From: Podarcis gaigeae
Lineage: Eukaryota
DNA length: 64,000 bases
Assembly: GCA_964106915.2 (NCBI GenBank)
Contig: OZ066922.1
Strand: one strand, 5' to 3'
Both the position numbers and the translations under genes were made by a program. Below, in pieces: positions 22,343 to 64,000 of this stretch; position 1 is the first letter of the stretch; the number at the start of each line of letters is the position of its first letter. The notes below the pieces were generated by a model. It was given only the letters and a program-made list of their open reading frames with translations. It was not told where the DNA came from and did not search any database.

Positions 22343-22590
22343 TCCAGGTCGCGTGGCCAGCGTGACAAACTGCATCTGGCGAGCCAGGGCGGCACACGGA
22401 AACGCCGTTTACCTTCCCGCTAGTAAGCGGTCCCTATTTATCTACTTGCACCCGGGGGTGCTTTCGAACTGCTATGTTGGCAGGCGCTGGGACCGAGCAA
22501 CAGAAGCGCACCCCGCTGCGGGGATTCGAACTGCTGACCTGACGATTGGCAGGTCCTAGGCGCTGAGGTTTTACCCACAGCGCCACCCGC
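22343..22590 (-). mobile_element. Sauria SINE, truncated at both ends, abutting the left edge of the duplication homology
   Basis: Same body as full copies at 29846 and 43020 (GTTTACCTTCCCGC, TATTTATCTACTTGCAC, GGGATTCGAAC); lacks the first few 5' bases and the 3' tail. Confidence 0.85.
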
Positions 22591-23382
22591 TGGTACCTTG
22601 ATCTATAACAGGGATTGGAAACCTGTGGCTCTACAGGTGTAGTTAAGACTCCAGTTCCCATCAATCCCAACTAGCATGGCCAGTGGTGGAAGATTATGGG
22701 AGGGCCAGCTTCAATGGCATCTGGAGATTCAAGCCTATAAGAAACCATCCCACCAAATGGCTCTCTACCTGCTTCTCTTCCCACTCCAATAAGGCTGGCA
22801 CAGATGAATCCTTTTCCCAACTAATTCCCTTAAACCAGGAAGATTTCAGCTGCCCATCCAAAGTCATTCCACGGTGAAATACGTCGCACGTGGCCTCTGC
22901 CATGACACAAGCAGCTCAGCCAGCCCACTAAGCCGAGTCGAAATCATGGCTGCGAAGGTGTAGGCAGAGATCCTCAAAGCCTGGTTACCAGGAAAGATTA
23001 TCATTATCACCATAGCATCCCTTGCATGCGTCTCCAGGTCTGCGTACGCACGTAACCGTACTGGGAACACAGCACATTGTACCATACTGGGAACACAGCA
23101 CATTGTACCCTCGCTGCCATAAAAGGGGGTCACCATGTCCAGGATTTCAAAGGTCTCTTAACTCTCCTTCCAGCATGAGGTCATGATCCCCGAAATAGAC
23201 CCACCGCCATCAAGGGGATCGTGGTGACCTCAATGCTGAGAAACAAGGCAGGAATTTGCAAGGGAGAGAGGTTGTTTATTCCACCTGAGAAAGCAAAGGA
23301 AAAAATGGGGGCGGTGGGGTGGAGGAAAGAGGAGACACCCAGGACACCCCCAACCCAGCACTGCGTCAGGGGCTTCCCTTAC

Positions 23383-23704
23383 CAGGCTCGTGCTCGCCCG
23401 GGTTGTCGGAGAGCTCGATGACCAGCAGCTCCCGGCCCTCGGAGCTGCGGCCCACGGTGTAGATCCTGCTGATGGACGAGCACTGCAGCCACACCGAGAC
23501 CATCGCCTCGCGCATCTCCGGGTAGCGGTGGTACTCGAAGGAGATGCCGTCCTCCTGGCTGAGGCGGCGACGCCGGTTCGCCGAGCCGCCGCCTGCCGCT
23601 TCGGGCTGCTCCGCCTCGGAGCCCTGCTGCCGCAAGGCGAAGGCGCCCAGCGCGCCGCAGAGCGCCGCCAGCAGCAGCGCCCAGAGCCCACCTCGCCGCG
23701 CCAT
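23383..23704 (-). CDS. CPE: Carboxypeptidase E, coding exon 1 (copy 1, presumably linked to the rest of CPE left of the window)
   Basis: [20 protein letters not shown] signal peptide, RRRR propeptide site, then [28 protein letters not shown]...[19 protein letters not shown] as in vertebrate CPE; 322 nt, phase-1 donor G|GTAAGG. Confidence 0.96.
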
Positions 23705-24110
23705 GCCTGACGGAGAAGAAGGACGGGCGAGCGAGCGAGCGAGCGCGGCTGGCAATGCGCGCTTCTGCCTCTGCTTCTTCGCTCAGCTGCTGCCTTGACG
23801 TGCTGCGTCGACGCGGGCTGCGCTCCCTCTGCGCCCGCCTCCCCCTCCCGCAGGCGGAGAAACCTGCTCCGTCCAGGAAGAGCGCTCGCGCCGCAGACTG
23901 CACTACTCGCGCCGCAGCCGCCGGGGGGAGACGCAAGGATGTACCACTGCCGCGCGCGGGGGATGCGAAGGTGTGACGTGCCGCCACGCGCGCGCGCGCC
24001 GCCCGTCCACCTGGCAGCGCACAGGCGCCGCGACTGGCCAGGGCCAAGCGCCCTGCAGGTTTGGCGCCAGAATCTTCGTCGCGCGCGTCCAGAGGTGCGG
24101 GAGGGTGTGC
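23705..24110 (-). promoter_or_regulatory. CPE: CPE CpG-island promoter / 5' UTR (copy 1)
   Basis: Very GC/CpG-rich; CRE-like TGACGT at about 23796 and 23974, (CG)n run at about 23987-23999, E-box CACCTG. Confidence 0.8.
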
Positions 24111-24269
24111 CTCTCAGGACACTCTGCACATGCCCCAAACCTCTCCATAGGATGAAGTGCATGTATGCCTGCCTGCCTGCCAGAACGCGTGCCACCCTAG
24201 GAGCCAACTCTTAGAGGCCGAGGTCACTTTGCCCCCACCCCCTACAATAAAATATTTGAGGGGACCTGC

Positions 24270-24687
24270 CAGTGCCGGATTTATGTATAAGCTAAACAAG
24301 CTGTAGCTTAGGGCCCCACTCTCTTGCGGCCCCCTCAAAAAAAATTCAAGGAAAAAACAACTGGATGTACATTTCCAAAATATAAGAAAAAAATAAAAAT
24401 AAAATAATTGTTATGAATAAAAAATCATTTAAAGTTAGAACTTAATGATTATTTCAATATCAATATACTTCTTAATTGTATTTCAGTTCAACAATTACTT
24501 TGATAAAATACATATTTTGTTATGTGCAAATGGCTTTAGATACCTATTAGGTCCATAAATTACCGTATAGCATATATTCAACACAAAATACAGTGATAAT
24601 TTGTTGTTGTCAAAGGACAGCTGGACATATAAAGGGCCCCATTACCTCCAGTAGCTTAGGGGCTCATCAAGCCTAAATCTGGCCCTG
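24270..24687 (+). mobile_element. Non-autonomous hAT element
   Basis: TIRs CAGTGCCGGATTTA / TAAATCTGGCCCTG, imperfect 8-bp TSD ggacctgc/gcacctcc; same family as 30768 and 48473; missing, with about 70 bp of flank, from copy 2. Confidence 0.85.
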
Positions 24688-24970
24688 GCACCTCCCCCCC
24701 TCCCCCCCAGTTAATGACCATTGCTATTCAAATGGTGTGTGTGTGTACCGTATCATGTGATTGATTATGCAGGGAGGGGAACACCCCATATTTTATTCGG
24801 GTTGGCCATGCGTGCCACAATCAGGGTGCGACTGGGCTTCAACATCCCACAAGGTTCTGCTGTTTTCCCATGCTCAAAAGTCACTGTTCGTTTCACGTTT
24901 GTTGAGTAGTCAGCTGTACAGCTGCAGATAAAACGTTTTAGGTGTGTTTTAAGTGCATTATACAAACGTG

Positions 24971-24985
24971 ACACCAGATGGCGCT
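24971..24985 (+). promoter_or_regulatory. CTCF-like motif
   Basis: ACACCAGATGGCGCT matches the CTCF core; identical copy at 53087-53101; motif match only. Confidence 0.45.
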
Positions 24986-25028
24986 GGTAAGCTAATGCCA
25001 AATTACATATACTGTACAGGTATACAGT

Positions 25029-28000
25029 TGTTGTTGTTGTTGTTTAGTCGTTTAGTCGTGTCCGACTCTTCGTGACCCCATGGACCAGAGAACGCCAGGC
25101 ACCTCTGTCCTCCACTGCCTCCCACAGTTTGGTCAAACTCATGCTGGTAACCTCGAAAACACTATCCAACCATCTCGTCCTCTGCCGTCCCCTTCTCCTT
25201 GTGCCCTCCATCTTTCCCAACATCAGGGTCTTCTCCAGGGAGTCTTCTCTTCTCATGAGGTGGCCAAAGTACTGGAGCCTCAGCTTCACAATTTGTCCTT
25301 CCAGTGAGCACTCAGGGTTGATTTCCTTCAGTATGGAGAGGTTTGATCTTCTTGCAGTCCATGGGACTCTCAAGAGTCTTCTCCAGCACCATAATTCCAA
25401 AGCATCAATTCTTCGGCGATCAGCCTTCTTTATGGTCCAGCTCTCACTTCCATACATCACTACTGGGAAAACCATAGCTTTAACTATACGAACCTTTGTT
25501 GGCAAGGTGATGTCTCTACTTCTCAAGATGCTGTCTAGGCCTGTCATTGCCCTTCTCCCAAGAAGCAGGCGTCTTTTAATTTCGTGGCTGCTGTCACCAT
25601 CTGCAGTGATCATTGAGCCCAAGAAAGTAAAATCTCTCACTACCTCCATTTCTTCCCCTTCTATTTGCCAGGAGGTGATGGGACCAGTGGCCATGATCTT
25701 CGTTTTTTTGATGTTGAGCTTCAGACCATATTTTTGCGCTCTCCTCTTTCACCCTCATTAAAAGGTTCTTTAATTCCTCCTCACTTTCTGCCATCAAGGT
25801 TGTGTCATCTGCATATCTGAGGTTGTTGATATTTCTTCCGGCAATCTTAATTCCGGCTAGGGATTCATCCAGCCCAGCCTTTCGCATGATGAATTCTGCA
25901 TATAAGTTAAATAAGCAGGGAGACAAAATACAGCCTTGTCGTACTCCTTTCCCAATTTTGAACCAATCAGTTGTTCCATATCCAGTTCTAACTGTAGCTT
26001 CTTGTCCCACATAGAGATTTCTCAGGAGACAGATGAGGTGATCTGGCACTCCCATTTCTTTAAGAACGTGCCATAGTTTGCCGTGGTCGACACAGTCAAA
26101 GGCTTTTGCATAGTCAATGAAGCAGAAGTAGATGTCTTTCTGGAACTCTCTAGCTTTCTCCATAACCCAGTGCATGTTTGCAATTTGGTCTCTGGTTCCT
26201 CTGCCTCTTCTAAATCCAGCTTGCACTTCTGGGAGTTCTCGGTCCACATACTGCTTGAGCCTTCCTTGTAGAATTTTAAGCATAACCTTGCTAGCGTGTG
26301 AAATGAGTGCAATTGTGCGGTAGTTGGAGCATTCTTTGGCACCGCCCTTCTTTGGGATTGGGATGTAGACTGATCTTCTCCAATCTTCTGGCCACTGCTG
26401 AGTTTTCCAAACTTGCTGGCATATTGAGTGTAGCACCTTAACAGCATCATCTTTTAAAATTTTAAATAGTTCAGCTGGAATACCATCACTTCCACTGGCC
26501 TTGTTATTTGCAGTGCTTTCTAAGGCCCATTTGACTTCACTTTCCAGGATGTCTGGCTCAAGGTCAGCAACCACACTACCTGGGGTATACGAGACATCCA
26601 TTTCTTTCTGGTATAATTCCTCTGTGTATTCTTGCCACCTCTTCTTGATGTCTTCTGCTTCTGTTAGGTCCTTTCCACTTTTGTCCTTTATTATGGAAAT
26701 CTTTGTACGAAATGTTCCTTTCATATCTCCAATTTTCTTGAACAGATCTCTGGTTCTTCCCATTCTATTGCTTTCCTCTATTTCTTTGCATTGCTCGTTT
26801 AAGAAGGTCTTCTTGTCTCTCCTTGCTATTCTTTGGAAATCTGCATTCAATTTCCTGTATCTTTCACCATCTCCCTCGCATTTTGCTTGCCTTCTCTCCC
26901 CCGCTATTTGTAAGGCCTCATTGGACAGCCACTTTGCTTTCTTGCATTTCCTTTTCATTGGGATGGTTTTCGTTGCTGCCTCCTGTGTAATGTTACGAGC
27001 CTCCATCCATAGTTCTTCAGGCATTCTGTCCACCAAATCTAAATCCTTAAACCTGTTCCTCACTTCCACTGTGTATTCGTAAGGGATTTGACTTAGATTG
27101 TATCTTACCGGCCCAGTGGTTTTTCCTACTTTCTTCAGTTTAAGCTTGAATTTTGCTATAAGAAGCTGATGATCTGAGCCACAGTCAGCTCCAGGTCTTG
27201 TTTTTGCTGACTGTATAGAGCTTCTCCATCTTTGGCTGCAGAGAATATAATCAATCTGATTTCGATGCTGCCCATCTGGTGATGTCCATGTGTAGAGTCG
27301 TCTCTTGTGTTGTTGGAAAAGCGTGTTTGTGATGACCAGCTTGTTCTCTTGACAGAACTCTTTTAGCCTTTGCCCTGCTTCGTTTTGATCTCCAAGGCCA
27401 AACTTGCCAGTTGTTCCTTTTATCTCTTGACTCCCTACTTTAGCATTCCAATCCCCTATAATGAGAAGAACATCCTTCTTTGGTGTCACTTCTATAAGGT
27501 CTTGTAAGTCTTCATAGAATTGGTCAATTTCAGTTTCTTCAGTACAAGTAGTTGGTGCATAAACTTGGATTACTGTGATGTTAAAAGGTCTGCCTTGGAT
27601 TCGTATCGAGATCATTCTATCATTTTTGAGATTGCATCCCAGTACAGCTTTCGCCACTCTTTTGTTGACTATGAGGGCCACTCCATTTCTTTTACGGGTT
27701 TCTTGCCCACAGTAGTAGATATGATGGTTATCCGAACTGAATTCACCCATTCCCGTCCATTTTAGTTCACTGATGCCCAGGATGTCAATATTTATTCTTG
27801 CCATCTTATTTTTGACCACCTCCAACTTACCCAGGTTCATGGTTCTTACATTCCAGGTTCCTATGCAATATTTTTCTTTACAGCATTGGACTTTCCTTTC
27901 GCTTCCAGGCATATCCGCAACTGAGCGTCCTTTCGGCTTTGGCCCAGCCGCTTCATCAGCTCTGGATCTACTTGTACTTGCCCTCCGCTCTTCCCCAGTA

Positions 28001-28256
28001 GCATGTTGAATGCCTTCCGACCTGAGGGGCTCATCTTCCAGCGTCATATCTTTTATATGCCTGTTGTCTTTGTCCATGGAGTTTTCTTGGCAGGGATACT
28101 GGAGTGGCTTGCCGGTTCCTGCTCCAGGTGGATCACGTTTGGTCAAAACTCTCCACTATGACCTGTTCATCTTGGGTGCCCTGCTTGGCATAGTTCATAG
28201 CTTCTCTGAGTTCTTCAAGCCCCTTTGCCACGGCAAGGCAGTGATCCATGAAGGGG
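25029..28256 (-). mobile_element. Full-length BovB (RTE-clade) LINE
   Basis: About 3.2 kb; APE endonuclease (IGTWNVRTM, LGISELKW, IDYIL, SDH) and RT (YAKAFDCVDH, GVRQGC, YADD) in ORFs 25594-28146 and 25044-25694 joined by one frameshift at the T5 run 25731-25735; (CAA)n tail; perfect 13-bp TSD ACAGGTATACAGT at 25016-25028 and 28257-28269. Confidence 0.97.
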
Positions 28257-28620
28257 ACAGGTATACAGTACAGTATTTTAAACTTTTTTTTTAAAAAAAA
28301 GCATGTTCACAACATTTTTTTTATACATGTGGCGATTCAGCCTATATTTACACTCATAGGAAACTGCCCTACTCTCCAAGGTCACTTCCAGACTACCTGG
28401 TTACTGAGCATTCTGGTTTGTTCATAGGAAGTTTCCAGGGACGTTCTTTGTTATTACTTATTTGAATTGTTGCCAATCCTTCATCATGAAGTTTCAGGGC
28501 AAGTTACAACAATTTTTAAAATACAATATTCCGAACAATTAAAGCAAATGAGATGACATTGCTTCAAGCATTATCCTGCCCTTTCTGCCGCAATTTCCCA
28601 TCCTTATTGCAAACACACAG

Positions 28621-28679
<59 letters not shown>
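28621..28679. repeat. (TATACA)n microsatellite
   Basis: About 10 tandem hexamers, interrupted on the right by a MITE. Confidence 0.9.
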
Positions 28680-28681
<2 letters not shown>

Positions 28682-28921
28682 GTGGTATCTCAGGTTAAGT
28701 ACTTAATTTATTCCGGAGGTCCGTACTTAGCCTGAAACTGTTCTTAACCTGAAGCATCACTTTAGCTAATGGGGCCTCCTGCTGCTGCCATGCCGCTGGA
28801 GCACGATTTCTGTTTTCATCCTGAAGCAAAATTCTTAACCTGAAGCACTATTTCTGGTTTAGCGGAGTCTGTAACCTGAAGCGTATGTAACCTGAAGCAT
28901 ATGTAACCTGAGGTACCACTG
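28680..28921. mobile_element. Tc1/mariner (pogo/Tigger-like) MITE, copy-1 specific
   Basis: TIR CAGTGGTA(C/T)CTC ... GAGGTACCACTG, TA TSD; absent at the paralogous site about 53720. Confidence 0.9.
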
Positions 28922-28965
28922 TACATATACATATACATATATATATGTGTGTGTGTGTGTGTGTA

Positions 28966-29481
28966 TTATGGTGCTGGAGGAGCAGTGGCGTAGCGTGGGG
29001 GGTGCAGGGGGGGCCGGCCGCACCGGGCGCAACATCTGGGGGTTAGGGTTAGGGGGCGCAAATCCACGGCTTAGGGGGTGCAAATTACTTGCCTTGCCCC
29101 GGGTGCTGACAACCCACGCTATGCCACTGTGGAGGAGACTCTTGAGAGTCCCATGGACTGCAAGAAGATCAAACCTATCCATTCTTAAGGAAATCAGCCC
29201 TGAGTGCTCACTGGAAGGACAGATCCTGAAGCTGAGGCTCCAATACTTTGGCCACCTCATGAGAAGAGAAGACTCCCTGGAAAAAACCCTGATGTTGGGA
29301 AAGATGGAGGGCACCAGGAGAAGGGGACGACAGAGGACGAGATAGTTGGACAGTGTTCTCAAAGCTACCAGCATGAGTTTGACCAAACTGTGGGAGGCAG
29401 TGGAAGACAGGGGTGCCTGGCGTGCTCTGGTCCATGGGGTCACGAACAGTCGGACATGACTAAATGACTAAACAACAACAA
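28966..29481 (+). mobile_element. 3' BovB fragment interrupted by a hAT MITE
   Basis: LWCWRRLLRVPWTARRSN...RGRQRTR* with (CAA)n tail; paralogue at 53786-54145 shares the same TAG stop. Confidence 0.92.
28983..29129. mobile_element. 147-bp hAT MITE nested in the BovB fragment, copy-1 specific
   Basis: TIR CAGTGGCGTAGCGTGGG / CCCACGCTATGCCACTG, perfect 8-bp TSD TGGAGGAG; empty site at about 53795. Confidence 0.92.
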
Positions 29482-29845
29482 TATATACACACACACACAT
29501 ACATGCATACATACATACATCCAATTTTGCAGGGAAAGGTGGTTTGTTGCGCAAGAGCTTCAAAGCAACTGTAACAAAGCAACCTGAATTTCCCACCCAG
29601 AAATATTAATGGACTGGAAAAACTAGTCCATTAATCTCATTACAGCCTACACAATGACAACTATTGAATATGGAGCGTTCTACATGCAAGGCAGGCAATC
29701 ACTCTATTTCTATAAAATATGAAGAGCAGTTCACCATTTTAATAAATAATTGTAAGATATCAGTGAAGCAGCAACAATCTTTAAAAAACAGCACAATCCT
29801 ATACATATGAGTTTCACAGAGATTAATGGTGCTTATTCCCTGGTA

Positions 29846-30209
29846 CTCAGGGACGCAGGTGGCGCTGTTTGTTAAAGCCTCAGCGCCTAGGACTTGCCGA
29901 TTGAAAGGTCGGCGGTTCGAATCCCTGCGGCGGGGTGCGCTCCCGCTGCTCGGTCCCAGCGCCTGCCAACCTAGCAGTTCGAAAGCACCTCCGGGTGCAA
30001 GTAGATAAATAGGGACCGCTTACCAGCGGGAAGGTAAACTGCGTTTCCGTGTGCAGCTCTGGCTCGCCAGAGCAGCGATGTCACGCTGGCCACGTGACCC
30101 AGAAGTGTCTCCGGACAGCGCTGGCCCCTGGCCTCTTAAGTGAGATGGGCGCACAACCCCAGAGTCTGTCAAGACTGGCCCGTACAGGCAGGGGTACCTT
30201 TACCTTTAC
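29846..30209 (+). mobile_element. Sauria SINE, full length, copy-1 specific
   Basis: GGGACGCAGGTGGCGCTG head, (ACCTTT)n tail, 12-bp TSD TATTCCCTGGTA; empty site at about 54495. Confidence 0.95.
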
Positions 30210-30767
30210 TATTCCCTGGTAAGCAGGTACAGGTTTGCAACCTAAAAGGTTAATACAGTATAGGGATTGCGGTGGGAGACGGAAGAGCTAAACTTCCCCT
30301 TCTTGTGGACTGTGGTCCTAATCTAGATTAGGCTGCTCCTGTGCTTGGCTTTCATTAAAAACAGAAACCCTGAGGTGGCTAAAGCAAAGCATTTAATGCC
30401 ACACAATGTGCAATAAGGGACCTCATGTATCAGACCACAGACCACAGAAAGTATGAAAAATACTCTAAAAACATATTAAAGAGGAACAAAGAGGTCCTTT
30501 GCATATTGTTCATTGCCTCTTTTTTTATTTGTTTACTTGCGGACATTAAAAGTATATTTTTTATATTTGTGGGCCTTTCCAGTGCTTGTGTTATGAAATG
30601 GAGACCACAATCCCCCCATGCTTGCTTTGCCTTTCTTTCAGAGGCAGTAATACTTCTGAAAACCAGTTTCTGGAAACCTCAGGAGGGGAGAGCAATCTTG
30701 TGCTTGCTTCCTGCTTGCGGGTTTCCCACAGACATCTGGCTGGCCAGCGTGAGAACAGGATGATGGA

Positions 30768-31187
30768 CAGGGCTGGATTTAGGCTTGATAAGGCCCAAAG
30801 GTCCTGAAGGTAATGGGGCCCTTTATATGTCCAGCTGTCCTTTGACAACAACAAATTGTCACTGTTTTTTGTGTTGAATATATGCTATATGTTAATTTGT
30901 GGACCTAATAGGTATCTAATGCCATTTGCACATAACAAAATATGTATTTTATCAAAGTAATTGATATAGAAATGAGTAAACCAGTGATATTTTAGGGAGC
31001 AGGCTAGCAGGTGGAGTCCATTACTTACATCATAGGAGCCTGCACAACACAAAACACTGTTGCTGTATGTAGGTTTTATTTTGTTTGTTTTTTATCTTAT
31101 ATTTTGGAAATGTACATCCAGGGGTTTTTTTCCTTTAAATTTTTTTGGGGGGGCTCCAAGAGAATGGAGCCCTAAACTATAGCACTG
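30768..31187 (-). mobile_element. Non-autonomous hAT element
   Basis: Reverse-oriented relative of 24270-24687; perfect 8-bp TSD ATGATGGA; only its left part survives in copy 2 (about 55052-55161). Confidence 0.88.
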
Positions 31188-32963
31188 ATGATGGACTAGT
31201 TGTTCATCATGACAACCTTCAGACTTCTCAGATGTCAGAGCCTGACTTACACAGGGCTATTTGAGGCGTGCAAGGCATAACCAAGCTGTTAGAAACCACA
31301 CACTCCAGTCTACAAGCAGGCAGTATTGCTTGTGTTGTAGTTAGAAGTGGTTTTTTTTTTAAGGAGATGTAGCTAAATGCATGCTTTCAGCCACACGTTG
31401 TTGGTTTTCCATGACCACTAGTATTTATTCCAACATGCAGTAGCATTTAGCGGTTTAATATATCTGGACTGTAACGAGGCAGAGGATCACACACCCATCC
31501 TAATTTCAGACTGGAACTAATGATTTTCAGGTTTTACAGACTCAGCTTTTACTGGCATCCATGACTCAGATGGAATGAAGCCATCACTTATGCTAAGTGG
31601 TGCCACTACTTATTTCACAAACAGCAGGATTCTACGGGGCAGGTAGGAGATGTACAGCCCCGTGGCATTCACAGCCTCCACAACAGATCAGCTGCTTGAA
31701 GCAGTTACCAGACTTCTACCTGCCACAAGAGCAAATCATCTTCTGGAACATGAGGTACACCAGACTTTTCTGAACCTTTAGATTTAAGCTCCCTAAAACA
31801 TACTTTCCTGCTAGTACCACTCCTGTAGAGAGAAACTGCTCGTTGTAATTTGGATTAACCATAAATTGTAATTTTCCAAGTTTAAATTTTGACATTGACA
31901 CATGTCTGTGTTTTATTTTCCTGTTGACATTCCAAACATTATTTTTCTCTTGTTTTACCTGTGTGTGTGTGTTTTTTTAAAGATTACGATCATTAAATCA
32001 GAAGTGGCCAACCTGCCTACTGTTATCATACAGCCCTCAGCATCGGATTCTTCTGTGCCTTCTTTCCATTCTCTGTGGCAGACCCCTGTTCATTGTCATG
32101 ACTCCCTCCTCCCCTGAATTCTCCAACCACTGTGGCCTGCTGAGAAGGAGGGTGTGGCTGCTTTTTCCTTCTGGGCAAAGGATTAAGAAGACTGCCTAAG
32201 GCCATGGCAGGGGAGGGGCAGAATTATTTTCACCAGAACCTTGCTCAATGTTCATTCACTGTCTCTTATTGTTACTCCGTGGGAGGTAATTAATCTGAAG
32301 AGTCATACCTTATTATGTTGCAATGCAACAACACATTGCTGTGGGGTGTGTTCCTGTTCACTGTTCCTGTCAGACAACCATACCCTCTTCCTCCAAAGTC
32401 CACTCCATTCCAGTCTTCTCACTTACCCAGGCAGTCAACAGTGCATGGCCTCTTAGCATGCTCTGTCCTCATCTAGCTGTTTTGCCAGTTCCAATATATT
32501 TTGCTGCCTGAGGCAAAGAACAAGATGGCACTCTATCCAACCCACTTCCACCTAAAGGAAATTGGACTGGCAGCTGAATCTTACTTTTGCACTTACAGGG
32601 TAGTGCCCTTTAGTGCTCACTTAGCGGGTGCGTGAGAGGCTTGTAGCCCACCTATAGCTCTGATTTCCAACAGAGTGGAATGTCCAGGGGGCCAGATGGA
32701 ATGGCTGGTGGGCTACCACTGTCACTTGAGCCAATTGCCTCACTCTGCCCAATGGTGGGGTGAATGCTATCAACGGCTTAAATGCATCTCTATACCTTTT
32801 AAAAAATGCATGCAAAATTTGTTTCCTTTGTCTTTTAAGCACCCAGGAACATCGTCAGTTTGAAGTTTGCACTAGAACCTCATTTCCCTGGCTGTACATA
32901 GTTTGCGGGAAACAGGGATGTATATAGGAGCTAGGCATATTAATGATGACCTTTGCATGGGGC

Positions 32964-38271: not shown

Positions 38272-38297
38272 CTCTCTCTCTCTCTCTCTCTCTCACA

Positions 38298-38343: not shown

Positions 38344-38347
<4 letters not shown>

Positions 38348-53127: not shown

Positions 53128-53361
53128 CAGTGGTACCTCGGGTTAAGTACTTAATTTGTTCTGGAGGCCTGTTCTTAACCCAGAACTGTTCCTAATCTGA
53201 AGCACCACTTTAGCTAATGGGGCCTCCTGCTGCCACCAGAGCACGATTTCTGTTCTCATCCTGAAGCAAAGTTCTTAACCCGAGGTACTATTTCTGGGTT
53301 AGCGGAATCTGTAACCTGAAGCATCTGTAACCTGAAGCATCTGTAACCTGAGGTAGCACTG
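53128..53361. mobile_element. Tc1/mariner MITE, copy-2 specific
   Basis: TIR CAGTGGTACCTC ... GAGGTAGCACTG; sits at the site occupied by BovB in copy 1. Confidence 0.9.
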
Positions 53362-53785
53362 TATACAGTATTTTAAACCTTTTTTTTAAAAAAAAAGAAA
53401 GCATGTTCACAGCGTTTTTTTATACCTGTGTCGATTCAGCCTATATTTACACTCATAGGAAACTGCCCTACTCTCCAAGGTCACTTCCAGACTACCTGGT
53501 TACTGAGCATTCTGGTTTGTTTATAGGAAGTTTGCAGGGACATTTTTTGTTATTACTTATTTGAATTGTTGCCAATCCTTCATCATGAAGTTTCAGGGCA
53601 AGTTACAACAATTTTTAAAATACAATATTCCGAGCAATTAAAGCAAATGAGATGACATTGCTTCAAGCATTATCCTGCCCTTTCTGTTGCATTTTCCTAT
53701 CCTTATTGCAAACACATTATACGTATACATATACATGTATACATATATATGTGTGTGTGTGTATGTATGTATACATATATATGTA

Positions 53786-54144
53786 TTATGGTGCTGGAGG
53801 AGACTCTTGAGAGTCCCATGGACTGCAAGAAGATCCAGCCTATCCATTCTTAAGGAAATAGCCCTGAGTTTTCACTGGAAGGACAGATCGTGAAGCTGAG
53901 GCTCCAATACTTTGGCTACCTCATGAGAAGAGAAGACTCCCTGGAAAAAACCCTGATGTTGGGAAAGATGGAGGGCACCAGGAGAAGGGGACGACAGAGG
54001 ACGAGATAGTTGGACAGTGTTCTCGAAGCTACCAGCATGAGTTTGACCAAACTGCGGGAGGCAGTGGAAGACAGGAGTGCCTGGTGTGCTCTGGTCCATG
54101 GGGTTACAAACAGTCAGACATGACTAAATGACTAAATAACAACA

Positions 54145-54145
<1 letters not shown>
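53786..54145 (+). mobile_element. 3' BovB fragment (copy 2, uninterrupted)
   Basis: Matches the 3' end of 25029-28256 and the fragment at 28966. Confidence 0.92.
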
Positions 54146-54182
<37 letters not shown>

Positions 54183-55161
54183 CCAATTTTGCGGGGAAAG
54201 GTGGTTTGTTGCGCAAGAGCTTCAAAGCAACTGTAACAGAGCAACCTGAATTTCCCACCCAGAAATATTAATGGACTAGAAAAACTAGTCCATCAATCTC
54301 ATTACTCCCTACACAATGACAACTATTGAATATGGAGCGTTCTACATGCAAGGCAGGCAATCACTCTATTTCTATAAAATATGAAGAGCAGTTCACCATT
54401 TTAATAAATAATTGTAAGATATCAGTGAAGCAGCAACAATCTTTAAAAACAGCACAATCCTATACATACGAGTTTCACAGAGATTAATGGTGCTTATTCC
54501 CTGGTAAGCAGGTACAGGTTTGCAACCTAAAAGGTTAATACAGTATAGGGATTGCGGTGGGAGAAGGAAGAGCTAAACTTCCCCTTCTTGTGGACTGTGG
54601 TCCTAATCTAGATTAGGCTGCTCCTGTGCTTGGCTTTCATTAAAAACAAACCCTGAGGTGGCTAAAGCAAAGCATTTAATGCCACACAATGTGCAATAAG
54701 GGACCTCATGTATCAGACCACAGACCACAGAAAGTATGAAAAATACTCTAAAAACATATTAAAGAGGAACAAAGAGGTCCTTTGCATATTGTTCATTGCC
54801 TCTTTTTTATTTGTTTACTTGCGGACATTAAAAGGATATATTTTTTATATTTGTGGGCCTTTCCAGTGCTTGTGTTATGAAATGGAGACCACAATCCTCT
54901 CATGCTTGCTTTGCCTTTCTTTCAGAGGCAGTAATACTTCTGAAAACCAGTTTCTGGAAACCTCAGGAGGGGAGAGCAATCTTGTGCTTGCTTCCTGCTT
55001 GCGGGTTTCCCACAGACATCTGGCTGGCCAGCGTGAGAACAGGATGATGGACAGGGCTGGATTTAGGCTTGATGAGGCCCTAAGCTACTGAAGGTAATGG
55101 GGCCCTTTATATGTCCAGCTGCTCTTTGTCAACAACACATTTTCAGTTTTTGTGTTGAATA

Positions 55162-55432
55162 CCGTATTTTTCGCCCTATAGGACGCACTTTTCCCCCTCC
55201 AAAAATGAAGGGGAAATCCGTGTGCATCCTATGGGGCGAATGCAGGCTTTCGCTGAAGTCTGGAGAGCGAGAGGGGTCGGTGCGCACCAACCCCTCTCGC
55301 TCCCCAGGCTTCAGGAGAGCCCCACCGCCAGCCCCACAAGCTTGGGGGACAGCAGGGAGGCGGAACGCCGCCATCCCGCTGTCCCCCGACTTGGTTAGAA
55401 GGCTGGCGGGGGGGGGGGGGGAGAAGCTTTTC
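55162..55432. mobile_element. Tc2-like DNA transposon, right end missing, copy-2 specific
   Basis: TA then CCGTATTTTTCGCCCTATAGGACGCAC, same TIR type as 1014-1475. Confidence 0.8.
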
Positions 55433-55439
55433 AGTTAGT

Positions 55440-55633
55440 TTAACTTAACAAATTTAACTAAATAATCATTAAATTTATTCCACTCTTCCTGATACTCCTC
55501 CTCCTTCTGGTCACGGACTCTTCCGGTTAGGTCGGCTAGCTCCGAAAAATCCATCATCTTCATCTGCCTTTCTTCTATTGTTGGTAATTATTGGGTTTTC
55601 CACTTTTTAGCTAACAAAATACGAGCAACAGTT
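55440..55633 (-). mobile_element. L1-clade ORF2 C-terminal fragment, copy-2 specific
   Basis: Minus strand reads TVARILLAKKWKTQ*LPTIEERQMKMMDFSELADLTGRVRDQ...EEWNKF, homologous to the C-terminus of the LINE at 3636-5858. Confidence 0.85.
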
Positions 55634-56160
55634 CTGGCCCCTGTTCATTGTCAGGACTCCCTCCTCCCCTGAAATCTCCAACCACTGTGGCCTGCTGAGA
55701 AGGAGGGTGCGGCTGCTTTTTCCTCCTGGGCGAAGGATTAAGAAGATTGCCTAAGGCCATGGCAGGGGAGGGGCAGAATTATTTTCACCAGAACCTTGCT
55801 CAGTGTTCATTCACTGTCTCTTATTGTTACTCCGTGGGAGGTAATTAATCTGAAGAGTCATACCTTATTATGCTGCAATGCAACAAAACATTGCTGTGGG
55901 GTGTGTTCCTGTTCACTGTTCTTGTCAGACAACCATACCCTCTTCCTCAAAAGTCCACTCCATTCCAGTCTTCTCACTTACCCAGTCAACAGTGCATGGC
56001 CTCTTAGCATGCTCTGTCCTCGTCTAGCTGTTTTGCCAGTTCCAATATATTTTGCTGCCTGAGGCAAAGAACAAGATGGCACTCTATCCAACCCACTTCC
56101 ACCTAAAGGAAATTGGACTGGCAAGCTGAATCTTACTTTTGCATTTACAGGGTAGTGCCC

Positions 56161-56353
56161 CTTACAGATAGGTAGCCATGTTGGTCTGCCATAGTCAAAA
56201 CAAAAAAAATTCCTTCCAGTAGCACCTTAAAGACCAACTAAGTTAGTTCTTGGTATGGTATCTGTAGAAGTGTGCATGCACACGAAAGCTCATACCAAGA
56301 ACTAACTTAGTTGGTCTTTAAGGTGCTACTGGAAGGAATTTTTTTTGTTTTGA
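56161..56353. mobile_element. Fold-back insertion with 63-bp perfect arms (probably Penelope-derived), copy-2 specific
   Basis: Arms 56195-56257 and 56291-56353, 33-nt loop, TSD AGGGTAGTGCCC; empty site at about 32597; family assignment from recall of squamate repeats only. Confidence 0.75.
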
Positions 56354-57848
56354 GGGTAGTGCCCTTTAGTGCTCACTTAGCAGGCTTGTAGCCCACCCAT
56401 AGCTCTGATTTCCAACAGAGTGGAATGTCCAGGGAGCCAGAAGGAATGGCTGGTGGGCTACCACTGTCCAAGGAACAGACCAAGGAAATCCCCAAACCAA
56501 GCACAGAGAAGAAAAAAACACAGAACATGCAAATGTGAATTTGTTCTTTGTTCAAATACACATCTAGTATTGAAATTATTCAAATACACATCTAGTATAA
56601 GACAGGGTAGATACAGTAAACATATGAAGCTTAGTAACACAAATATTCACGAGAAAGACTTCATAGGTTTAAAGGAATTTGGGCAATAAAATAAGTGTTA
56701 GGAGTCACTTCCAAACCTGGAGGTTGTACGGTAAGGCAAATTGATTTTGATTACAAATAATGAATGCAATGGAGAACAATAACTGGAAACAAATCTATTA
56801 CTTTTATTAATACTGTACAAAAAAGTAGAAGAGCAGCAGAGAATATAGGAGAATATAGGATTGTTTCTGAAATACTGTCATGCAAACTTTTTCTCCCCCG
56901 AAGAATAAAATTCTAGAAACAGCAGAGTGGAAGGGTCTGTGAAGGGTATTGGCCAGGGGAGTGGAGAGGGCCCGGAAGGCCAAATGAAGAGGTCTGCAGA
57001 GGCACATTTGATCCCCAGGCCTAAGGTTTCTCATCCCTGATGTATATTCTCAGACACTAATTATGGTCAACACCCTCGTTTTCTGAATGTTATAAAGGAA
57101 CAGGAAAACATAGCTCAAATTCCAATATATATATCTATTTATTTGTTGCATGGTAAACATGAAAATGTCAGACTACCTTTACAATTTTTTTTTTGCCCAC
57201 GACAAGTGCAAAATATAGCAATCATTCAGTAGTTTGCAAATATTTATTTATGAACATTAACTACATTGACACAGTTAATTTAGTAAAAGAGAATAGAAAG
57301 GCTCATCCCAGCAGATTAAGAAGAAGGGGAGAAAAAAGGTTCCTCTCTCAAACACCAGACTAAGAAAGGTTTTTTAAAGGAAACAACTATTAATATGTGC
57401 AAATACTCCTCTTCCGGTATTTTTGCTCCCAAGGAAGTTCTACTCAGCAGCTTATTAAACCAATTTTTATGGGTATGCTTCAGAAGAAACTTAACTTCAT
57501 ATATCCAAATACTTTACAAACAGTTCTATCCAACTCTAATGGAAACTTTATTCTTTTACAAACTTTGTTCTTTACAAACATTCAAATTTGTGGCCTTCAT
57601 CTTTAACCTTTACTTAAATATATATGCTTCACTTGCGTATAAAATAGAAAATGCATTCATTTTAGGAAGATAGGGCCGTTTCCTCTAGCACACAGCTAGG
57701 GCCCAGCAGGCTTGTTCTTGGGCTCCAGTTAAAAGCATCATATAGCTTTGAATTTGCACAGGGTGTTAAATCTTCCAGGCTTAACCAAAAGTTCATGGTA
57801 GTTATGTGCATTTGTCAAGTGCTCCTCCTTATATTTCTGCAGGGAAAT

Positions 57849-58056
57849 TTATTTGGTCTTCTTTTCCACCATGCACTCTTGTTTCTCCAATTTCTCTCTG
57901 TAAGAATTGTACTGCGAGTCGGTACCAAACAGTTTATCCCACCACGTGAAGGTTGAAGCATAGTTGCCAATGAAGTTCATATGGTGGAAGTCATGGAATC
58001 GAGCCCCAGCATAGAAAGGCACCAAATGCAATGGATTCAGAGGAATGTCGTAGCCG
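57849..58056 (-). CDS. MSMO1: MSMO1 copy 2, exon 6
   Basis: 208 nt, intact, LHLVPF versus LHLLPF in copy 1. Confidence 0.96.
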
Positions 58057-58484
58057 CTAAGGAGAGCGAGAGAGAGAGGAGAATTTACAATACAGATACG
58101 GAAGACATTGCTCGCATTTCCATTCAAGTGAAGCATTGCTAAAATCAGAAGCAAGTCCCACAGAGTTTAATGGGGCTTACTCTCTTGTAAGCGGGTATAG
58201 GACTACAACCATAGACATTTACCAGTTTCCATATTAACTTGGTTGTAATACCCCTGAAGTTCCTGGACTATGCAACTGGACAACATACTTCTGAAGCTGT
58301 AAAAGTAGCATCCGCCATGTGGTATTTAAAATGTGTTTCTTACTTCTGTACTGATGATACATGCTTTATATATAGTCCCTGCAAGGAGGTCATGTAAATA
58401 TCTCAGCACAAAGTGTCCACAACACTATGCCAAACAGAGGAATGAAATAGTTGAAAAATGTGGGCTCTCTCTCTCTCTCCCACA

Positions 58485-58552
<68 letters not shown>

Positions 58553-59384
58553 CTGGATACATAGCTAGACTTTGCTGGGAAAGTATTCAATGAATCAAGG
58601 GTGGCCAACCTATGGCTCTCCAAATGTTGTTCCCATCAACTAAAAATTATGGTTAAATGTTCTCTCTAACCATAATTTGTTTCACTTGTTCAGACATCAC
58701 AAGGAATTCTAGTTAGCTTAACATTAAAAAGCTTTCTATCTGAAATAAATAAATAAATAAATATAAATTCATTCATTCATTCATTCATTCATTCATTCAT
58801 TCATTCATTTATAGCCTTCCCATCTGGCTGTGTTGCCCCAGCCACTCTGTATCTATCTTTGACATGTGAAAATAGAGGGGAAGAGGGAGCATGTGAGCCT
58901 AAGGCTCATTTAGGTAGCATAGTTTCCAGTTGCATCTTATCATTTCTAGTTACATCTTAATCATACTTAATAGAGCAGCTTTTATGTGGAACTTAAGGTG
59001 ACCCTACTTGCTCAAAGAGTATCAAATTAGTTTGTAAGCTTGTCATCTAAAGAATCATGTGCAGTAGAATCCTCTGAATGTTTATGCAAACTCTGCTAAA
59101 GTCACTGAAACTTACTCTAAGGTAGGAATGCACAGGATTTCAGTCTTAAATACATGCACTTAGAATAAGGACATTTAGAGGAAATCCCGAATAGTTAATA
59201 GATTTTTTTTTTAAGTCATTTGTCTAGATTTTACCTGGTGACTTTGGGTGGGATTCAACGAAGTGTGACTTAGAGTACACCTAGATGACTAATTTAGGTC
59301 TAATACCCCAAGTAACACGTTTTTGAATACAACCCTCTATATTTCTGATGAATATGACCAGACTGAACAGCGAAAGTAGATTAC

Positions 59385-59539
59385 CTGTGGACGTCAATGG
59401 TCTCCAGCAAGCGACAGATCACCCATGCCCACAGAAGAATCACGTGATTGCAAAACACCATTATTCCAATGAAAAACCCAGCTCCAAGGATAAGGGTTTC
59501 CAGAGGGTGTGCATATTCAGCTTGCATTCCAAACGGAGC
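59385..59539 (-). CDS. MSMO1: MSMO1 copy 2, exon 5
   Basis: 155 nt, same as copy 1, splice sites intact. Confidence 0.96.
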
Positions 59540-60735
59540 CTATGAAAGGAGGAAGAGGGGAGAAAATGCTCTTTTGTATGCCAAGACATAAATATACTTT
59601 ACGGCTAATCTGAAATGTATACAGTGGGTTACGAACTAAATTTGTTCCGGAGGTCCGTTCTTAATCTGAAACCGTTCTTAACCTGAGGTACCACTTTAAC
59701 TAATGGGGCCTCCTGCCGCTGCTGCACGGTTTCTGTTCTCATCCTGAGGTATAGTTTTTAACCCGAGGTACTACTTCTGGGTTAGCGGAGTCTGTAACCT
59801 GAAGTGTTTGTAACCCGTGATACGACAGTACGTATCTGCATGGCCAGGTTGTTCTAGCAGAGTTCGCCCCCTCTCGCACTCAGATCCTGGTTTTAATGTT
59901 ACATACAGGTAACAGAGGAATGAGTGAACTGTGTTTAGCTCTACTCCAACTCTTTATGACTACAAATTCTGGACTGCCCCTGAGACAGTATAATTTCAGC
60001 TGGTAGCATAGAACCATGATCACTTAAGACGACAGAGTAAGAACCCCCTGTAAAATATTCAGAATGGAAGCAAATCATAGCTTATATGAAAACTTTACAG
60101 TGATGCTTTCCTCACCTTCAGATCCCCCTGAAGGTTTTTCTGAGTCTTTAGTCTATGCTCCCTACTGAGTGTTATTTCAGTAATAGAAGCTAGCTATTCA
60201 AAAAAGCAATTGGAGGATGGTTGTTAGGGGAACCACCCAATGTAGGTTACAGGTGGGCTTTAGCTCAGTTGTACAGCACAGTGATACAGAAGGACTAAAG
60301 TTCAGTCACTGGTCTCTCTGTTTAATAGGACCTCAGTAAGTAAGGAGACTGGAGAATTGCTGCTGGTCAGACTTCACTACAAATATACTAGGTCAAAGTG
60401 GGTTATGTTCCTAACCTACATGATCATTATCAGAATTGTAGGGGAAACCACCTGAAGGGATTTTTGTATTTTATAGCCAGTCATTGGTGGGTAAGATGTT
60501 AGACATATTCAGAGCACAGCATTTAAATTGGCGAACTATTTTGAGCGATCAGTTTCGAAGTCTGTCCAACTACAGCAATATTAAACTCTTGATGAAAACA
60601 GTTTGCTAAGCGTGCTGTTTTCTCTTCTCCCTTTTTACAAAAAGAATAGCTAATGTATGCCTAGTGCTTTTATATGCTCACAGCATTACAGCATTAACTA
60701 GGTAACGTTCACCAAGAATTTAAGGCAATACATAC

Positions 60736-60862
60736 CACAAACTCATGATGCACTTTGTGGATGTACTTATATATTCTCTTGTGATGCAGCAGCCTATGCA
60801 GAAAATAATGCCAGGCATCCTCAATCACAGCACACCCAAAACATTGAGAAAGTAGCACATAC
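60736..60862 (-). CDS. MSMO1: MSMO1 copy 2, exon 4
   Basis: 127 nt, two synonymous differences from copy 1. Confidence 0.96.
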
Positions 60863-61251
60863 CTGGGGGGGGGGGGGTAGGGAAAGAGAAGCATTTGTTA
60901 AGACAAGTACAATAGATTAGGACACCTTGTCTCCCAACCCAATTTTTGCTTTTTACAAATCATTGTAGCAGTTTTCTAAAACTAATTTCACATTAAAATT
61001 TACTTAATCCATTAACATTTTTCTTTCTTGCAAATCAGTTGTAATTTGTAATGATAAGAACGCTTTATAGGGAAAGTTCAGCTTGAAAATGACTGACAAC
61101 TAGAAACTTCTTGTTATTGTTCTGTGCAGAACTTTTAGAAATCTTCCATATGCTGAAGTGCAGTGCTTGATCATAACAGGATTTGAGAAACACTGCATTT
61201 ACTGAAGTACTTAACTGCACAGAGCTCTTTAAGTGAAATCCATCTACTTAC

Positions 61252-61400
61252 CATCTTGGCATGCTTTCCCAGTCATAAGGAATATTAAAATATTCTGTGA
61301 AGTAAAAGGTACCAAGTATCAGAGGAAACTGAATAAAAAAGTGATTGAACATAAGTGCCTTGAAACACTTCCATTGTCTTTCCCAGGTTTCTGGCTTATC
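61252..61400 (-). CDS. MSMO1: MSMO1 copy 2, exon 3
   Basis: 149 nt, same as copy 1, splice sites intact. Confidence 0.96.
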
Positions 61401-62213
61401 CTGTAAACAAGAAATAAAAGTATTTTATAAATATAAGTAGAATATTCCAATGATATTACTGAAGATGTGATACATGGGAATAAGTACTAAATGAATAGTA
61501 CTTCATACTATAATAGAAGAATACCTAAATTAAAGGTAACGGAATATCAGCTTTGTCTTATCTGACACTGTTTCAACTGATAATGCCCCAAAATGCAGCA
61601 ACACTGCTGCCTGTGATTATCAATGTTTCCATTAATATCAGATATACATTTCAATGTTGATTCCCTGCCAATTATCATGCTACTCCAGGTGTACTTGGGG
61701 TAAGGCGAGAGATAAATATTAAGGTAGTGTTAGAATGCTCAGATTTTTGTCTTTCAGCCCGGGAACAGTACTGCCATTTGGTCTGAATTTATTGTTAATG
61801 AATCAAGATTACAAATGCTATTTTCAAGTCAAAAGGAAGCAGTTATGGTATGCATAGATCACAGCATCTATGGCATCAGAGCAGGGATGAGTAACTTGTG
61901 ACCTTCCAAACATTGTTGAACTCCAGATTCTGTCAGCCCCAGCCGGCATAGCCCATGGTCAGGAATGAGCGGAGCTCATATATCTGGAGGGCCACAGGTT
62001 TCCCCACCCCTGAATTAGTTTGGAGCCTGTACATTGTTTCAAGAAGGCTGCAGAAAATCAGCACAGTAAAGTAATCATGGTTTTATAACAGACTGGGCTC
62101 ATTATCTCATTAGGAAGCAGGATACTATGATCTATCCACCTTTTAGTAGAAACTGGATTGAGAAGGCACCAGAATTCTATACGATACAAGTTTCACTGAC
62201 TTATTATTCAATA

Positions 62214-62559
62214 CAGTGGTACCTCGGGTTACAAAAATCATGCAGCGACGGCACGGGAGGCCCCATTAGCTAAAGTGGTTTTCAGGTTAAGAACGGACCT
62301 CCGAATTAAGTTCTTAACCCGAGTACCACTGTACAGTGGTACCTCAGGTTACATACGCTTCAGGTTACAGACTCTGCTAACGCAGAAATAGTACCTTGGG
62401 TTAAGAACTTTGCTTCAGGATTAGAACAGAAATCGTGCTCCGGCAGCGCAGCAGCAGCAGGAGGCCCCATTAGCTAAAGTGGTGCTTCAGGTTAAGAACA
62501 GTTTCAGGTTAAGAACGGACCTCCAGAACAAATTAAGTACTTAACCCGAGGTACCACTG
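62214..62559. mobile_element. Tandem pair of Tc1/mariner MITEs (62214-62331 copy-2 specific; 62334-62559 shared)
   Basis: TA-[CAGTGG...CCACTG]-TA-[CAGTGG...CCACTG]-TA. Confidence 0.9.
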
Positions 62560-63567
62560 TATTGCAATATTCCAAGCTTTATGTTATTACATATATACCA
62601 TTCATGTATCAGGGTGTATGTCACTCAAGCGAATTTCACACACGGTTACTATTAAAAACAAGAGTGCCCAGGGCTGATGCTATATACAGGGGCCATGGTC
62701 TAGCTTAGTGATGGATAGCCTGAAGCTTTGCAGACTGCTCCAACTCCCATCAGCCCCTGCCAGCATTGCCAATGGTCAGAGATGACAGGACAGTTTGGGG
62801 GACCACTGGTTCCCACCTGTGTTCTAGCCACTCTACAGCTTCTGTGGGGGAAACTAGCAACTGTACAATGTTATCTCCTTTCTTCATTTACTGGCTGAAC
62901 AATGCAATCCTATGCATTGCTTAAGACAGAATCCTACACCAACTAATCTGTGAGTAAGCCACAGTGACAATCACATCTGAGCAACTGTCACTGTGGCTTA
63001 CTCACAGGTAAGTCTGTGTAGCGTTCCAGCTTAAATACATCTTTAACATTACCTCTTGTCCTTTGGGGTAGCGTGCAGGATAACAGTAAACATCTAGCAA
63101 TTAAACCTTTTCAGACGTTCCACTTTCTACAATAACATATCAAAACATACACAAACACCCTATTTACTTGAAAGCCTGCAAGTTAGAGGCCAGACTGTCA
63201 AAGGCCCTTTGCCTCGTGCTTTTCAACAGTACCACCCAGAATTCAGATTGGAAGTCAGCAATACGTACTCACAGTTAGCGAAACTAAATATCTATATAAG
63301 AAATTAACCAAAATATGCATAATAATTATACAATCACATAAATAAGTGTAAATTGTTCCGTGTTTGTTATAAAAGCAGAGTAAAGCATAAGATCGGTTTT
63401 TTTCTATCCTCTGAAATAGGCTGCTCACAAAAATGTCACCAGTCGCAAGCTGGCAGAATATGGGAAATGAACTCATGATCTGGGGAGCTCCAAAGTTATG
63501 CCACTTGTTGGAGCCATGTATGACACCAGAGCTGGAATTTTTCATACTAGACAACACTCCATCTTAC

Positions 63568-63822
63568 CTGTTGTATTTTATACTTTTGCATGTAAGGTAT
63601 AAACTGAAAGATAAATCCAGGCAAACATATTAAAAAGTAGGAAAGTTCATGCATGAGAAGTGATCCCCAGGTTGCAATCTGGTATTTGGTGTAGTTATTC
63701 AGCATATATGTCCAAGCATTTTTAAATGGCTGTTGTAGCGGATTCTCAGGCAAGAAAGAGTCTATATATTCTACAGCCAGGTAAGCAGAATTCAGCATGC
63801 CAACACTGTCGTTAGTTGCCAT
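63568..63822 (-). CDS. MSMO1: MSMO1 copy 2, first coding exon (exon 2; exon probably starts at 63866)
   Basis: [14 protein letters not shown]...YKIQQ, 255 nt, donor intact; its exon 1 and promoter would lie beyond the window. Confidence 0.96.
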
Positions 63823-64000
63823 CGTTCAGTTCTGGAACATCACACCTGTAGCTTCTCTGCAGGATTCTAGGAACAGTAAATAGACATCATGGTAAAGACA
63901 CCATAACCAAAATGACATCGGCCAGCAACACAGTGTGCAGCTGTTGACTTGCATAAAAATAGGGGACAAGGTCTATCCCTTTCCATACTAGACAACAGAG

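What the first reader, a model, noticed from the sequence alone, without database searches (positions are those of the whole stretch)
22589..64000. Tandem duplication (unit up to about 29 kb) giving two intact MSMO1 coding sequences and a second CPE first exon
Seen: two colinear direct copies with no N gap between them, each with all five MSMO1 coding exons (255+149+127+155+208 nt), intact splice sites, His boxes and KKXX motif. A hand count gave about 31 substitutions in about 810 bp of intron 2 (41230-42040 vs 61405-62214), with fewer elsewhere. Known: MSMO1 is the sterol C4-methyl oxidase, single-copy and adjacent to CPE in human. Inference: a lineage-specific dosage increase in sterol C4-demethylation. 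This is of interest in lizards because femoral-gland signalling secretions are sterol-rich, but that link is speculative.
Basis: partly seen in the sequence, partly recalled or inferred. Interest (0 to 1): 0.8.

Follow-up and report, generated by a model that had tools for sequence, protein, structure and literature searches.

The report
Old MSMO1 gene duplication in lizard
This lizard (a wall lizard, by earlier scan notes) carries two side-by-side, intact-looking copies of the cholesterol-making gene MSMO1; sequencing data from another individual and a related species show the doubling is real and old, and snakes have multiplied the same gene independently, but what the extra copy does is untested.

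Summary
Observation confirmed. Copy A (22589-~50047) and copy B (51447 to past the window end) are colinear, without N, 2.3% apart, with separate transposon insertions. Both have five intact MSMO1 coding exons (5 synonymous, 3 conservative amino-acid differences; pN/pS 0.15), and B carries an orphan CPE exon 1. The haplotype-artefact rival is largely refuted: public contigs cross 51446/51447 in the probable source sample, a second individual from another study, and a second species; depth right of it is 1.4-1.6x, against 1.51x predicted for two collapsed copies. Corrections: 50048-51446 is single-copy, so this is not a clean 29-kb tandem, and B is 9 kb shorter over the aligned part. A CPE::MSMO1 splice would meet an in-frame stop, so no fusion protein. 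The orphan CPE CpG island shows no decay. Several snake lineages carry their own MSMO1 repeats (three genes placed on one rattlesnake scaffold); I found no paper on this. Dosage is my best mechanism, but expression and the femoral-gland link are untested, and B's promoter lies outside the window. The scan noted this only on this same stretch. Ordinary kind of event, moderately interesting pattern.

The parts
22589..50047 (.). Copy A of the duplicated unit (CPE intron-1 start, CPE exon 1, intergenic, whole MSMO1 with promoter, upstream flank)
   Evidence: Aligns to copy B up to 44069; 49775-50047 at about double depth in the read contigs
50048..51446 (.). Single-copy spacer between the two copies (in this species and species B); the original junction lies at one of its two ends
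   Evidence: One contig, flat single depth in X15, X1, X2; depth halves at a branch at 50047; no homology left of copy A
51447..64000 (.). Copy B of the unit, running off the window
   Evidence: contigs bridge 51446/51447 in X15, X1, X2
23383..23704 (-). CPE exon 1 coding part, copy A (presumed to belong to the full CPE gene that continues leftwards; no further CPE exon was found within 1-22600)
   Evidence: identical to copy B, which hits Pfam Peptidase_M14; homologues named carboxypeptidase E
52054..52375 (-). Orphan CPE exon 1 coding part, copy B, phase-1 donor intact, in a CpG island without decay
   Evidence: no substitution vs copy A over 672 aligned bases
47829..48100 (-). MSMO1-A promoter and non-coding exon 1 (CpG island, three CCAAT boxes, SRE-like site at 47970, donor at 47829)
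   Evidence: Motif scan and CpG o/e 0.8, sequence; function inferred from known SREBP/NF-Y control of sterol genes
43636..43890 (-). MSMO1-A first coding exon (255 nt; acceptor probably 43934)
   Evidence: 81-86% identity to bird, skink and snake MSMO1
41077..41225 (-). MSMO1-A coding exon 2 (149 nt)
40562..40688 (-). MSMO1-A coding exon 3 (127 nt, His boxes 1 and 2)
39204..39358 (-). MSMO1-A coding exon 4 (155 nt)
37660..37867 (-). MSMO1-A last coding exon (208 nt, His box 3, KKXX, stop)
63568..63822 (-). MSMO1-B first coding exon (255 nt; D5 and M9 versus E5 and I9 in A)
61252..61400 (-). MSMO1-B coding exon 2 (identical to A)
60736..60862 (-). MSMO1-B coding exon 3 (2 synonymous differences)
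59385..59539 (-). MSMO1-B coding exon 4 (identical to A)
57849..58056 (-). MSMO1-B last coding exon (V241 versus L241 in A; 2 synonymous differences)
25017..28268 (-). RTE/BovB-type LINE with endonuclease and RT, only in copy A (post-duplication insertion)
29834..30209 (.). Sauria-type SINE with target-site duplication, only in copy A
43008..43386 (-). Sauria-type SINE with target-site duplication in MSMO1-A intron, absent from B
53126..53356 (.). MITE-like insertion only in copy B
55173..55632 (.). 460-bp insertion only in copy B (not classified)
22343..22590 (-). Short Sauria-type SINE whose 5' end coincides with the left edge of copy A

Best explanation
A real, apparently fixed, several-million-year-old tandem segmental duplication at the ancestral MSMO1-CPE locus of wall lizards. 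It copied the whole MSMO1 gene plus the CPE promoter and first exon; afterwards each copy gained its own transposons and copy B lost several kilobases, and one copy lost about 1.4 kb next to the junction. SHOWN: two intact reading frames, continuity across the junction in three independent read sets, both alleles present in each individual of this species, amino-acid change suppressed about sevenfold relative to silent change. INFERRED: both genes are still expressed from their own SREBP/NF-Y promoters and make the same ER di-iron sterol C4-methyl oxidase, so the working effect is more capacity for C4-demethylation of sterol intermediates towards 7-dehydrocholesterol and cholesterol (dosage). 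My odds: real duplication 0.93; both copies functional 0.8; kept for dosage rather than by drift or partition of expression about 0.5. The orphan CPE exon cannot make a CPE-MSMO1 fusion protein.
For: Bridging contigs 50541-51542 (X15, 0 differences), 50985-51542 (X1, other individual and study, 3 differences), 50554-51542 (X2, other species, 30 differences), all with the B-type 16-bp deletion. Contig 51513-51882 carries copy-A alleles and sits at 1.45-1.49x (X15) and 1.42-1.62x (X1) of spacer depth; 1.51x is predicted for two collapsed copies. Copies differ by 2.5% in non-coding DNA, whereas the other individual's word share (0.80) implies about 0.7%. 3 non-synonymous differences on 710 sites vs 5 synonymous on 175 (Fisher p 0.01; 17.7 expected at the non-coding rate, p 2e-5); position 241 varies among I/V/L in homologues and position 5 is variable. 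Skink locus L005 shows the ancestral order MSMO1 then CPE exon 1. Snakes show repeated, lineage-grouped MSMO1 copies, so extra copies of this gene are tolerated and kept in squamates.
Against: No RNA evidence for either copy. B's promoter and exon 1 lie outside the window; only double depth at 49775-50047 suggests B extends past its promoter. Only contigs, not raw or long reads, were available, and the 96 bases right of 51446 are mostly an old MITE remnant. Purifying selection shows function, not why the copy was kept. Sterol genes are feedback-controlled by SREBP (established knowledge), which can cancel a dosage gain. M9 in copy B is not seen among the homologues counted (I 47, V 2).
Confidence: 0.55

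Rival explanations
1. Real duplication, both copies functional, but kept by splitting expression (subfunctionalisation), possibly because the orphan CPE promoter, 4 kb upstream of the MSMO1-A promoter and pointing at it, interferes with or redirects copy A in CPE-rich neuroendocrine tissue while copy B is unaffected.
For: Orphan CPE island keeps all 98 CpGs (28 of 28 outside the identical tract) while 32 of 113 decayed elsewhere; 672 aligned bases without substitution around CPE exon 1, P about 4e-8 at the mean rate; donor intact.
Against: Gene conversion between the two islands explains the identity without any function. Splicing CPE exon 1B to the first coding exon of MSMO1-A ends at an in-frame stop just before the MSMO1 start codon or is out of frame for every AG tested. 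Five poly(A)-like hexamers lie between. B lost 53 bp of the CPE promoter.
Confidence: 0.2
2. Real duplication fixed by drift; both copies stay intact because of weak selection and occasional gene conversion, with no net change in sterol flux because SREBP feedback buffers dose.
For: Patchy divergence with long identical runs (672, 341, 330, 307 bp) suggests conversion; snake copies group by lineage, as concerted evolution would give.
Against: Synonymous divergence (2.9%) equals non-coding divergence (2.5%), so the coding region was not recently converted, yet only 3 amino-acid differences exist where about 9 would be expected on a neutral B lineage alone (hand estimate).
Confidence: 0.2
3. Assembly artefact: two diverged haplotypes placed head to tail.
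For: 2.3% divergence with many indels can occur between introgressed haplotypes in Podarcis (introgression is pervasive, PMC8114931); identical CPE exon 1 is what alleles would show; reads were tested only over 49650-52030.
Against: The path 49671-51882 is continuous in contigs of the probable source sample and of another individual, and crosses 51446/51447 in another species; 49671-50047 has no counterpart left of copy A; all three animals would have to be heterozygous for the same two haplotypes; spacer depth 8.5-11.9 in X1/X2 fits a diploid single-copy depth if P1 is the study with depth cut-offs 288-792 over about 36 genomes (identity of P1 is my guess).
Confidence: 0.05

Closest known systems
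MSMO1 / SC4MOL / yeast ERG25 sterol C4-methyl oxidase (fatty acid hydroxylase superfamily, PF04116)
   Same: Five coding exons, three His boxes, KKXX ER-retrieval end, 76-96% identity per exon to bird, skink and snake proteins; next to CPE as in skink L005 (and human, from memory).
   Different: Present twice, 99% identical at protein level; most amniote records seen name a single gene.
Tandem MSMO1 arrays in snakes (Crotalus tigris scaffold VORL01000303.1; also several records for C. adamanteus, Pituophis, Erythrolamprus, Naja, Pseudonaja)
   Same: Tandem, intron-containing, intact copies of the same gene in squamates.
   Different: Independent events: snake paralogues are 90-93% identical and group by snake lineage; no CPE exon 1 was found within 10 kb of the three rattlesnake genes examined.
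Tandem segmental duplication with a partial (5'-only) copy of the neighbouring gene
   Same: One whole gene plus an orphan promoter and first exon placed upstream of the other copy; later TE insertions, deletions and probable gene conversion.
False (haplotypic) duplication in genome assemblies
   Same: Two diverged colinear copies next to each other.
   Different: No gap; junction present in independent individuals and species; depth fits two homozygous copies.

Membership tests
MSMO1 sterol C4-methyl oxidase | FA_hydroxylase domain with three His boxes | tested here: met
   exons identical or nearly so in both copies
MSMO1 sterol C4-methyl oxidase | Best hits named methylsterol monooxygenase 1, and position upstream of CPE | tested here: met
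   (searched exon by exon)
MSMO1 sterol C4-methyl oxidase | C-terminal KKXX ER signal | tested here: met
   Both end in KKTK
MSMO1 sterol C4-methyl oxidase | Enzyme activity on 4,4-dimethyl sterols | not testable with these tools
   Needs erg25 complementation or sterol profiling
True tandem segmental duplication | Junction present in read data independent of the assembly | tested here: met
   Contigs bridge 51446/51447 in X15, X1, X2; 30-base graph overlap across 50047/50048
True tandem segmental duplication | Both copies present in each individual at full depth | tested here: met
   A and B alleles in X15 and X1; 1.4-1.6x vs 1.51x predicted; contig depth only, short stretch
True tandem segmental duplication | Exact head-to-tail unit without spacer | tested here: not met
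   50048-51446 is single-copy in X15, X1, X2; near-tandem after a later deletion, or spacer from the start
Retained functional duplicate | Purifying selection on both coding sequences | tested here: met
   pN/pS 0.15, p 0.01; small counts
Retained functional duplicate | Both copies have a promoter and are transcribed | tested here: inconclusive
   A promoter present; B promoter outside window; no RNA run held the stretch searched (non-coding stretch, kind dna)
Chimeric fusion gene (CPE::MSMO1) | Open reading frame across the chimeric splice | tested here: not met
   In-frame stop just before the MSMO1 start, or frameshift, for all six AG sites within 70 nt
False haplotypic duplication | No junction in reads, half depth per copy | tested here: not met

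The most novel reading that the evidence does not exclude
MSMO1 is repeatedly and independently amplified across squamates (wall lizards and several snake lineages) because selection favours high sterol output in skin and scent glands, and in wall lizards the retained orphan CPE promoter helps split the two copies between tissues.
Probability: 0.2. Interest if true: 0.7.

Novelty: new member of a known kind. Interest (0 to 1): 0.42.

Why it matters
A core cholesterol-pathway gene that is usually single-copy has been duplicated and kept in wall lizards and, separately, in several snakes. Wall-lizard scent marks are mostly cholesterol plus provitamin D3 (63% and 5%, PMC3263623), both downstream of this enzyme, so the two copies with diagnostic SNPs give a direct way to ask whether gland sterols are made locally and whether gene dose shapes a sexual signal. 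It also warns that short-read mapping to single-copy references will show false heterozygosity at MSMO1 and CPE exon 1 in Podarcis. If expression turns out to be buffered, it is an ordinary retained duplicate.

Tried and rejected
No lacertid MSMO1 or CPE record could be reached: three word searches, two cluster listings and exact look-ups of two window ORFs gave none, so other Podarcis assemblies and the right end of copy B were not seen. The costly all-protein search was not used because the protein was not left open. The Varanus CPE record had no locus. Five paper searches found nothing on MSMO1 duplication in lizards or snakes or on femoral-gland sterol synthesis genes; a search for 4,4-dimethyl sterols in Podarcis secretions was blank, so that remembered lead is not supported here. 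No homology between the flanks left of the two copies, so the unit does not visibly extend further left. Unequal crossing-over between two independent MITEs rejected: the MITE remnant at the left edge, its apparent target-site duplication and about 19 bases before it are shared by both copies. CPE::MSMO1 fusion protein rejected. No KLHL2 exon recognised in 47950-51446 (by eye only). Whether species G (X9) has the duplication stayed inconclusive.
Full report
Observation. The window has no N. Self-comparison shows a colinear direct duplication starting at 22589 and 51447 and running to 44069 and the window end. Both copies hold, on the minus strand, five MSMO1 coding exons of 255, 149, 127, 155 and 208 nt with intact splice sites, no internal stop, His boxes and a KKTK end; Pfam finds FA_hydroxylase and, for CPE exon 1, Peptidase_M14. 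No contig that I took for human was fetched; unnamed mammalian proteins in the hit lists were only used in bulk local comparisons.

Anatomy. Read along the minus strand the order is: MSMO1-B (promoter outside the window), 5.5 kb, orphan CPE exon 1 (52375-52054) with its CpG island, a stretch of CPE intron, a 1.4-kb spacer, the MSMO1-A upstream flank and promoter (CCAAT boxes at 47998, 47953, 47924, an SRE-like site at 47970, non-coding exon ending at 47829), MSMO1-A, 14 kb, CPE exon 1A (23704-23383) and the long CPE intron. The skink Lerista shows the ancestral order, MSMO1 followed 9.3 kb later by CPE exon 1 (L005). Each copy has its own insertions: an RTE-type LINE and two SINEs with target-site duplications in A, a MITE and a 460-bp piece in B; B lacks several kilobases, partly by what look like microhomology deletions.

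Is it real? Earlier scan notes call the genome a wall lizard (not checked by me). A search with the non-coding stretch 49650-52030 found the probable source sample (X15, X16), another individual of the same species from another study (X1) and related species. Laying four runs gave contigs that cross 51446/51447 with hundreds of bases on the left and 96 on the right in X15 (0 differences), X1 (3) and species B (X2, 30 differences); none shows the 16 extra bases that copy A has at 51508. In X15 and X1 the next contig, 51513-51882, overlaps by 30 bases, carries copy-A alleles, and has 1.4-1.6 times the spacer depth; 1.51 is expected if A and B are both homozygous and collapsed. On the left, 49775-50047 is at about double depth and the depth halves at a branch at 50047. 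Two haplotypes cannot give this in three animals of two species. Copy divergence (2.5% non-coding) is also far above the roughly 0.7% implied for the second individual and close to the 2.2-3.0% of species B's contigs. Limits: contigs only, a 2.4-kb stretch, coded species names, and the 96 right-hand bases are mostly an old MITE remnant, though locus-specific. Species G is inconclusive: no bridging contig was listed, but it shows the same branch at 50047. The event therefore predates at least one speciation; with Podarcis diversification at 4-6.5 and 10-17 million years ago (PMC8114931) I infer an age of roughly 5-12 million years, unverified.

Where is the junction? 50048-51446 is single-copy in species A and B. 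Either the junction is at 51446 and B's far end lost the spacer's counterpart, or it is at 50047 and copy A lost its first 1.4 kb, which would fit the coincidence of A's left edge with the 5' end of a SINE. I cannot decide without sequence beyond the window. Unequal crossing-over or template switching made the duplication (inference); no shared repeat at a breakpoint was shown.

Are both genes alive? There are 5 synonymous differences on about 175 sites and 3 non-synonymous on about 710 (E5D, I9M, L241V), pN/pS 0.15, Fisher p 0.01; 17.7 would be expected at the non-coding rate. Silent divergence matches non-coding divergence, so this is selection, not recent conversion. The changes are conservative and lie away from the His boxes; 241 is I, V or L in homologues. 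Expression is untested, and B's promoter is only inferred from the double depth 2 kb upstream of A's promoter.

The orphan CPE exon. With the phase-1 donor, every AG within 70 nt of the MSMO1-A start gives either a frameshift or an in-frame stop just before the start codon, so no fusion protein; a regulatory effect on copy A remains possible.

Mechanism. Best reading: a retained duplicate of the ER di-iron sterol C4-methyl oxidase that raises capacity for the step from 4,4-dimethyl sterols towards 7-dehydrocholesterol and cholesterol (pathway role from established knowledge). Rivals are tissue partition, drift with feedback buffering, and, at about 5%, artefact.

Comparison. Tandem duplication with a partial neighbour is a well-known kind of event. 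The added observation is that snakes have amplified the same gene: three separate genes within 270 kb in Crotalus tigris, several records in other snakes, with copies grouping by lineage in a 20-protein tree that left out the window's proteins and all fragments under 250 aa. These are 90-93% identical, against 99% here, so the lizard event is separate. Some snake records could themselves be assembly duplicates; I placed only the rattlesnake ones. No paper on MSMO1 duplication in squamates was found in the searchable library, which omits most subscription journals; RefSeq annotation already lists the snake copies and may list two in Podarcis, which I could not reach.

Verdict. Real, old, probably functional duplicate; new member of a known kind; interest 0.42, with a 0.2 chance of the more interesting reading (recurrent selection on sterol output in squamates, 0.7 if true).

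Noticed in passing
L002, L003, L004 (Crotalus tigris scaffold VORL01000303.1, 1.33-1.60 Mb): Three separate five-exon MSMO1 genes within about 270 kb; four annotated paralogues 90-93% identical. Several other snakes list two or more copies, and copies group by lineage in a tree. No paper found.
   Followed up: partly
window 49671-49804: Two contig variants (1 and 8 differences) whose depths sum to about 2.5-3 times single-copy depth in X15 and X1: possibly a third, more diverged copy of this MSMO1-upstream piece outside the window.
   Followed up: no
window 23225-23896 and 51894-52567: 672 aligned bases with no substitution (one 2-bp indel) across CPE exon 1; all 98 CpGs of the island kept in both copies: gene conversion or selection on the orphan exon.
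   Followed up: partly
window 22589-44069 vs 51447-64000: Large indels are lopsided: 10.1 kb only in A, 1.2 kb only in B, while small indels are balanced (17 vs 18). Several A-only pieces look like microhomology deletions in B.
   Followed up: partly
window 50018-50253, run X9 (species G): The more distant species also shows a branch at 50047 with depth falling from 55.7 to 33; it may share the duplication and retain both copies of the spacer, or simply be heterozygous. No bridging contig was listed.
   Followed up: partly
window 25597-28155: Young RTE/BovB-type LINE with an 853-aa open endonuclease-RT frame, inserted in copy A only.
   Followed up: partly
window 3638-5585: Another LINE (RT-like frames on the plus strand, broken into at least two frames) in CPE intron 1.
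   Followed up: no
window 62227-62346: Partial tandem second MITE copy next to a shared MITE in the MSMO1-B intron.
   Followed up: no
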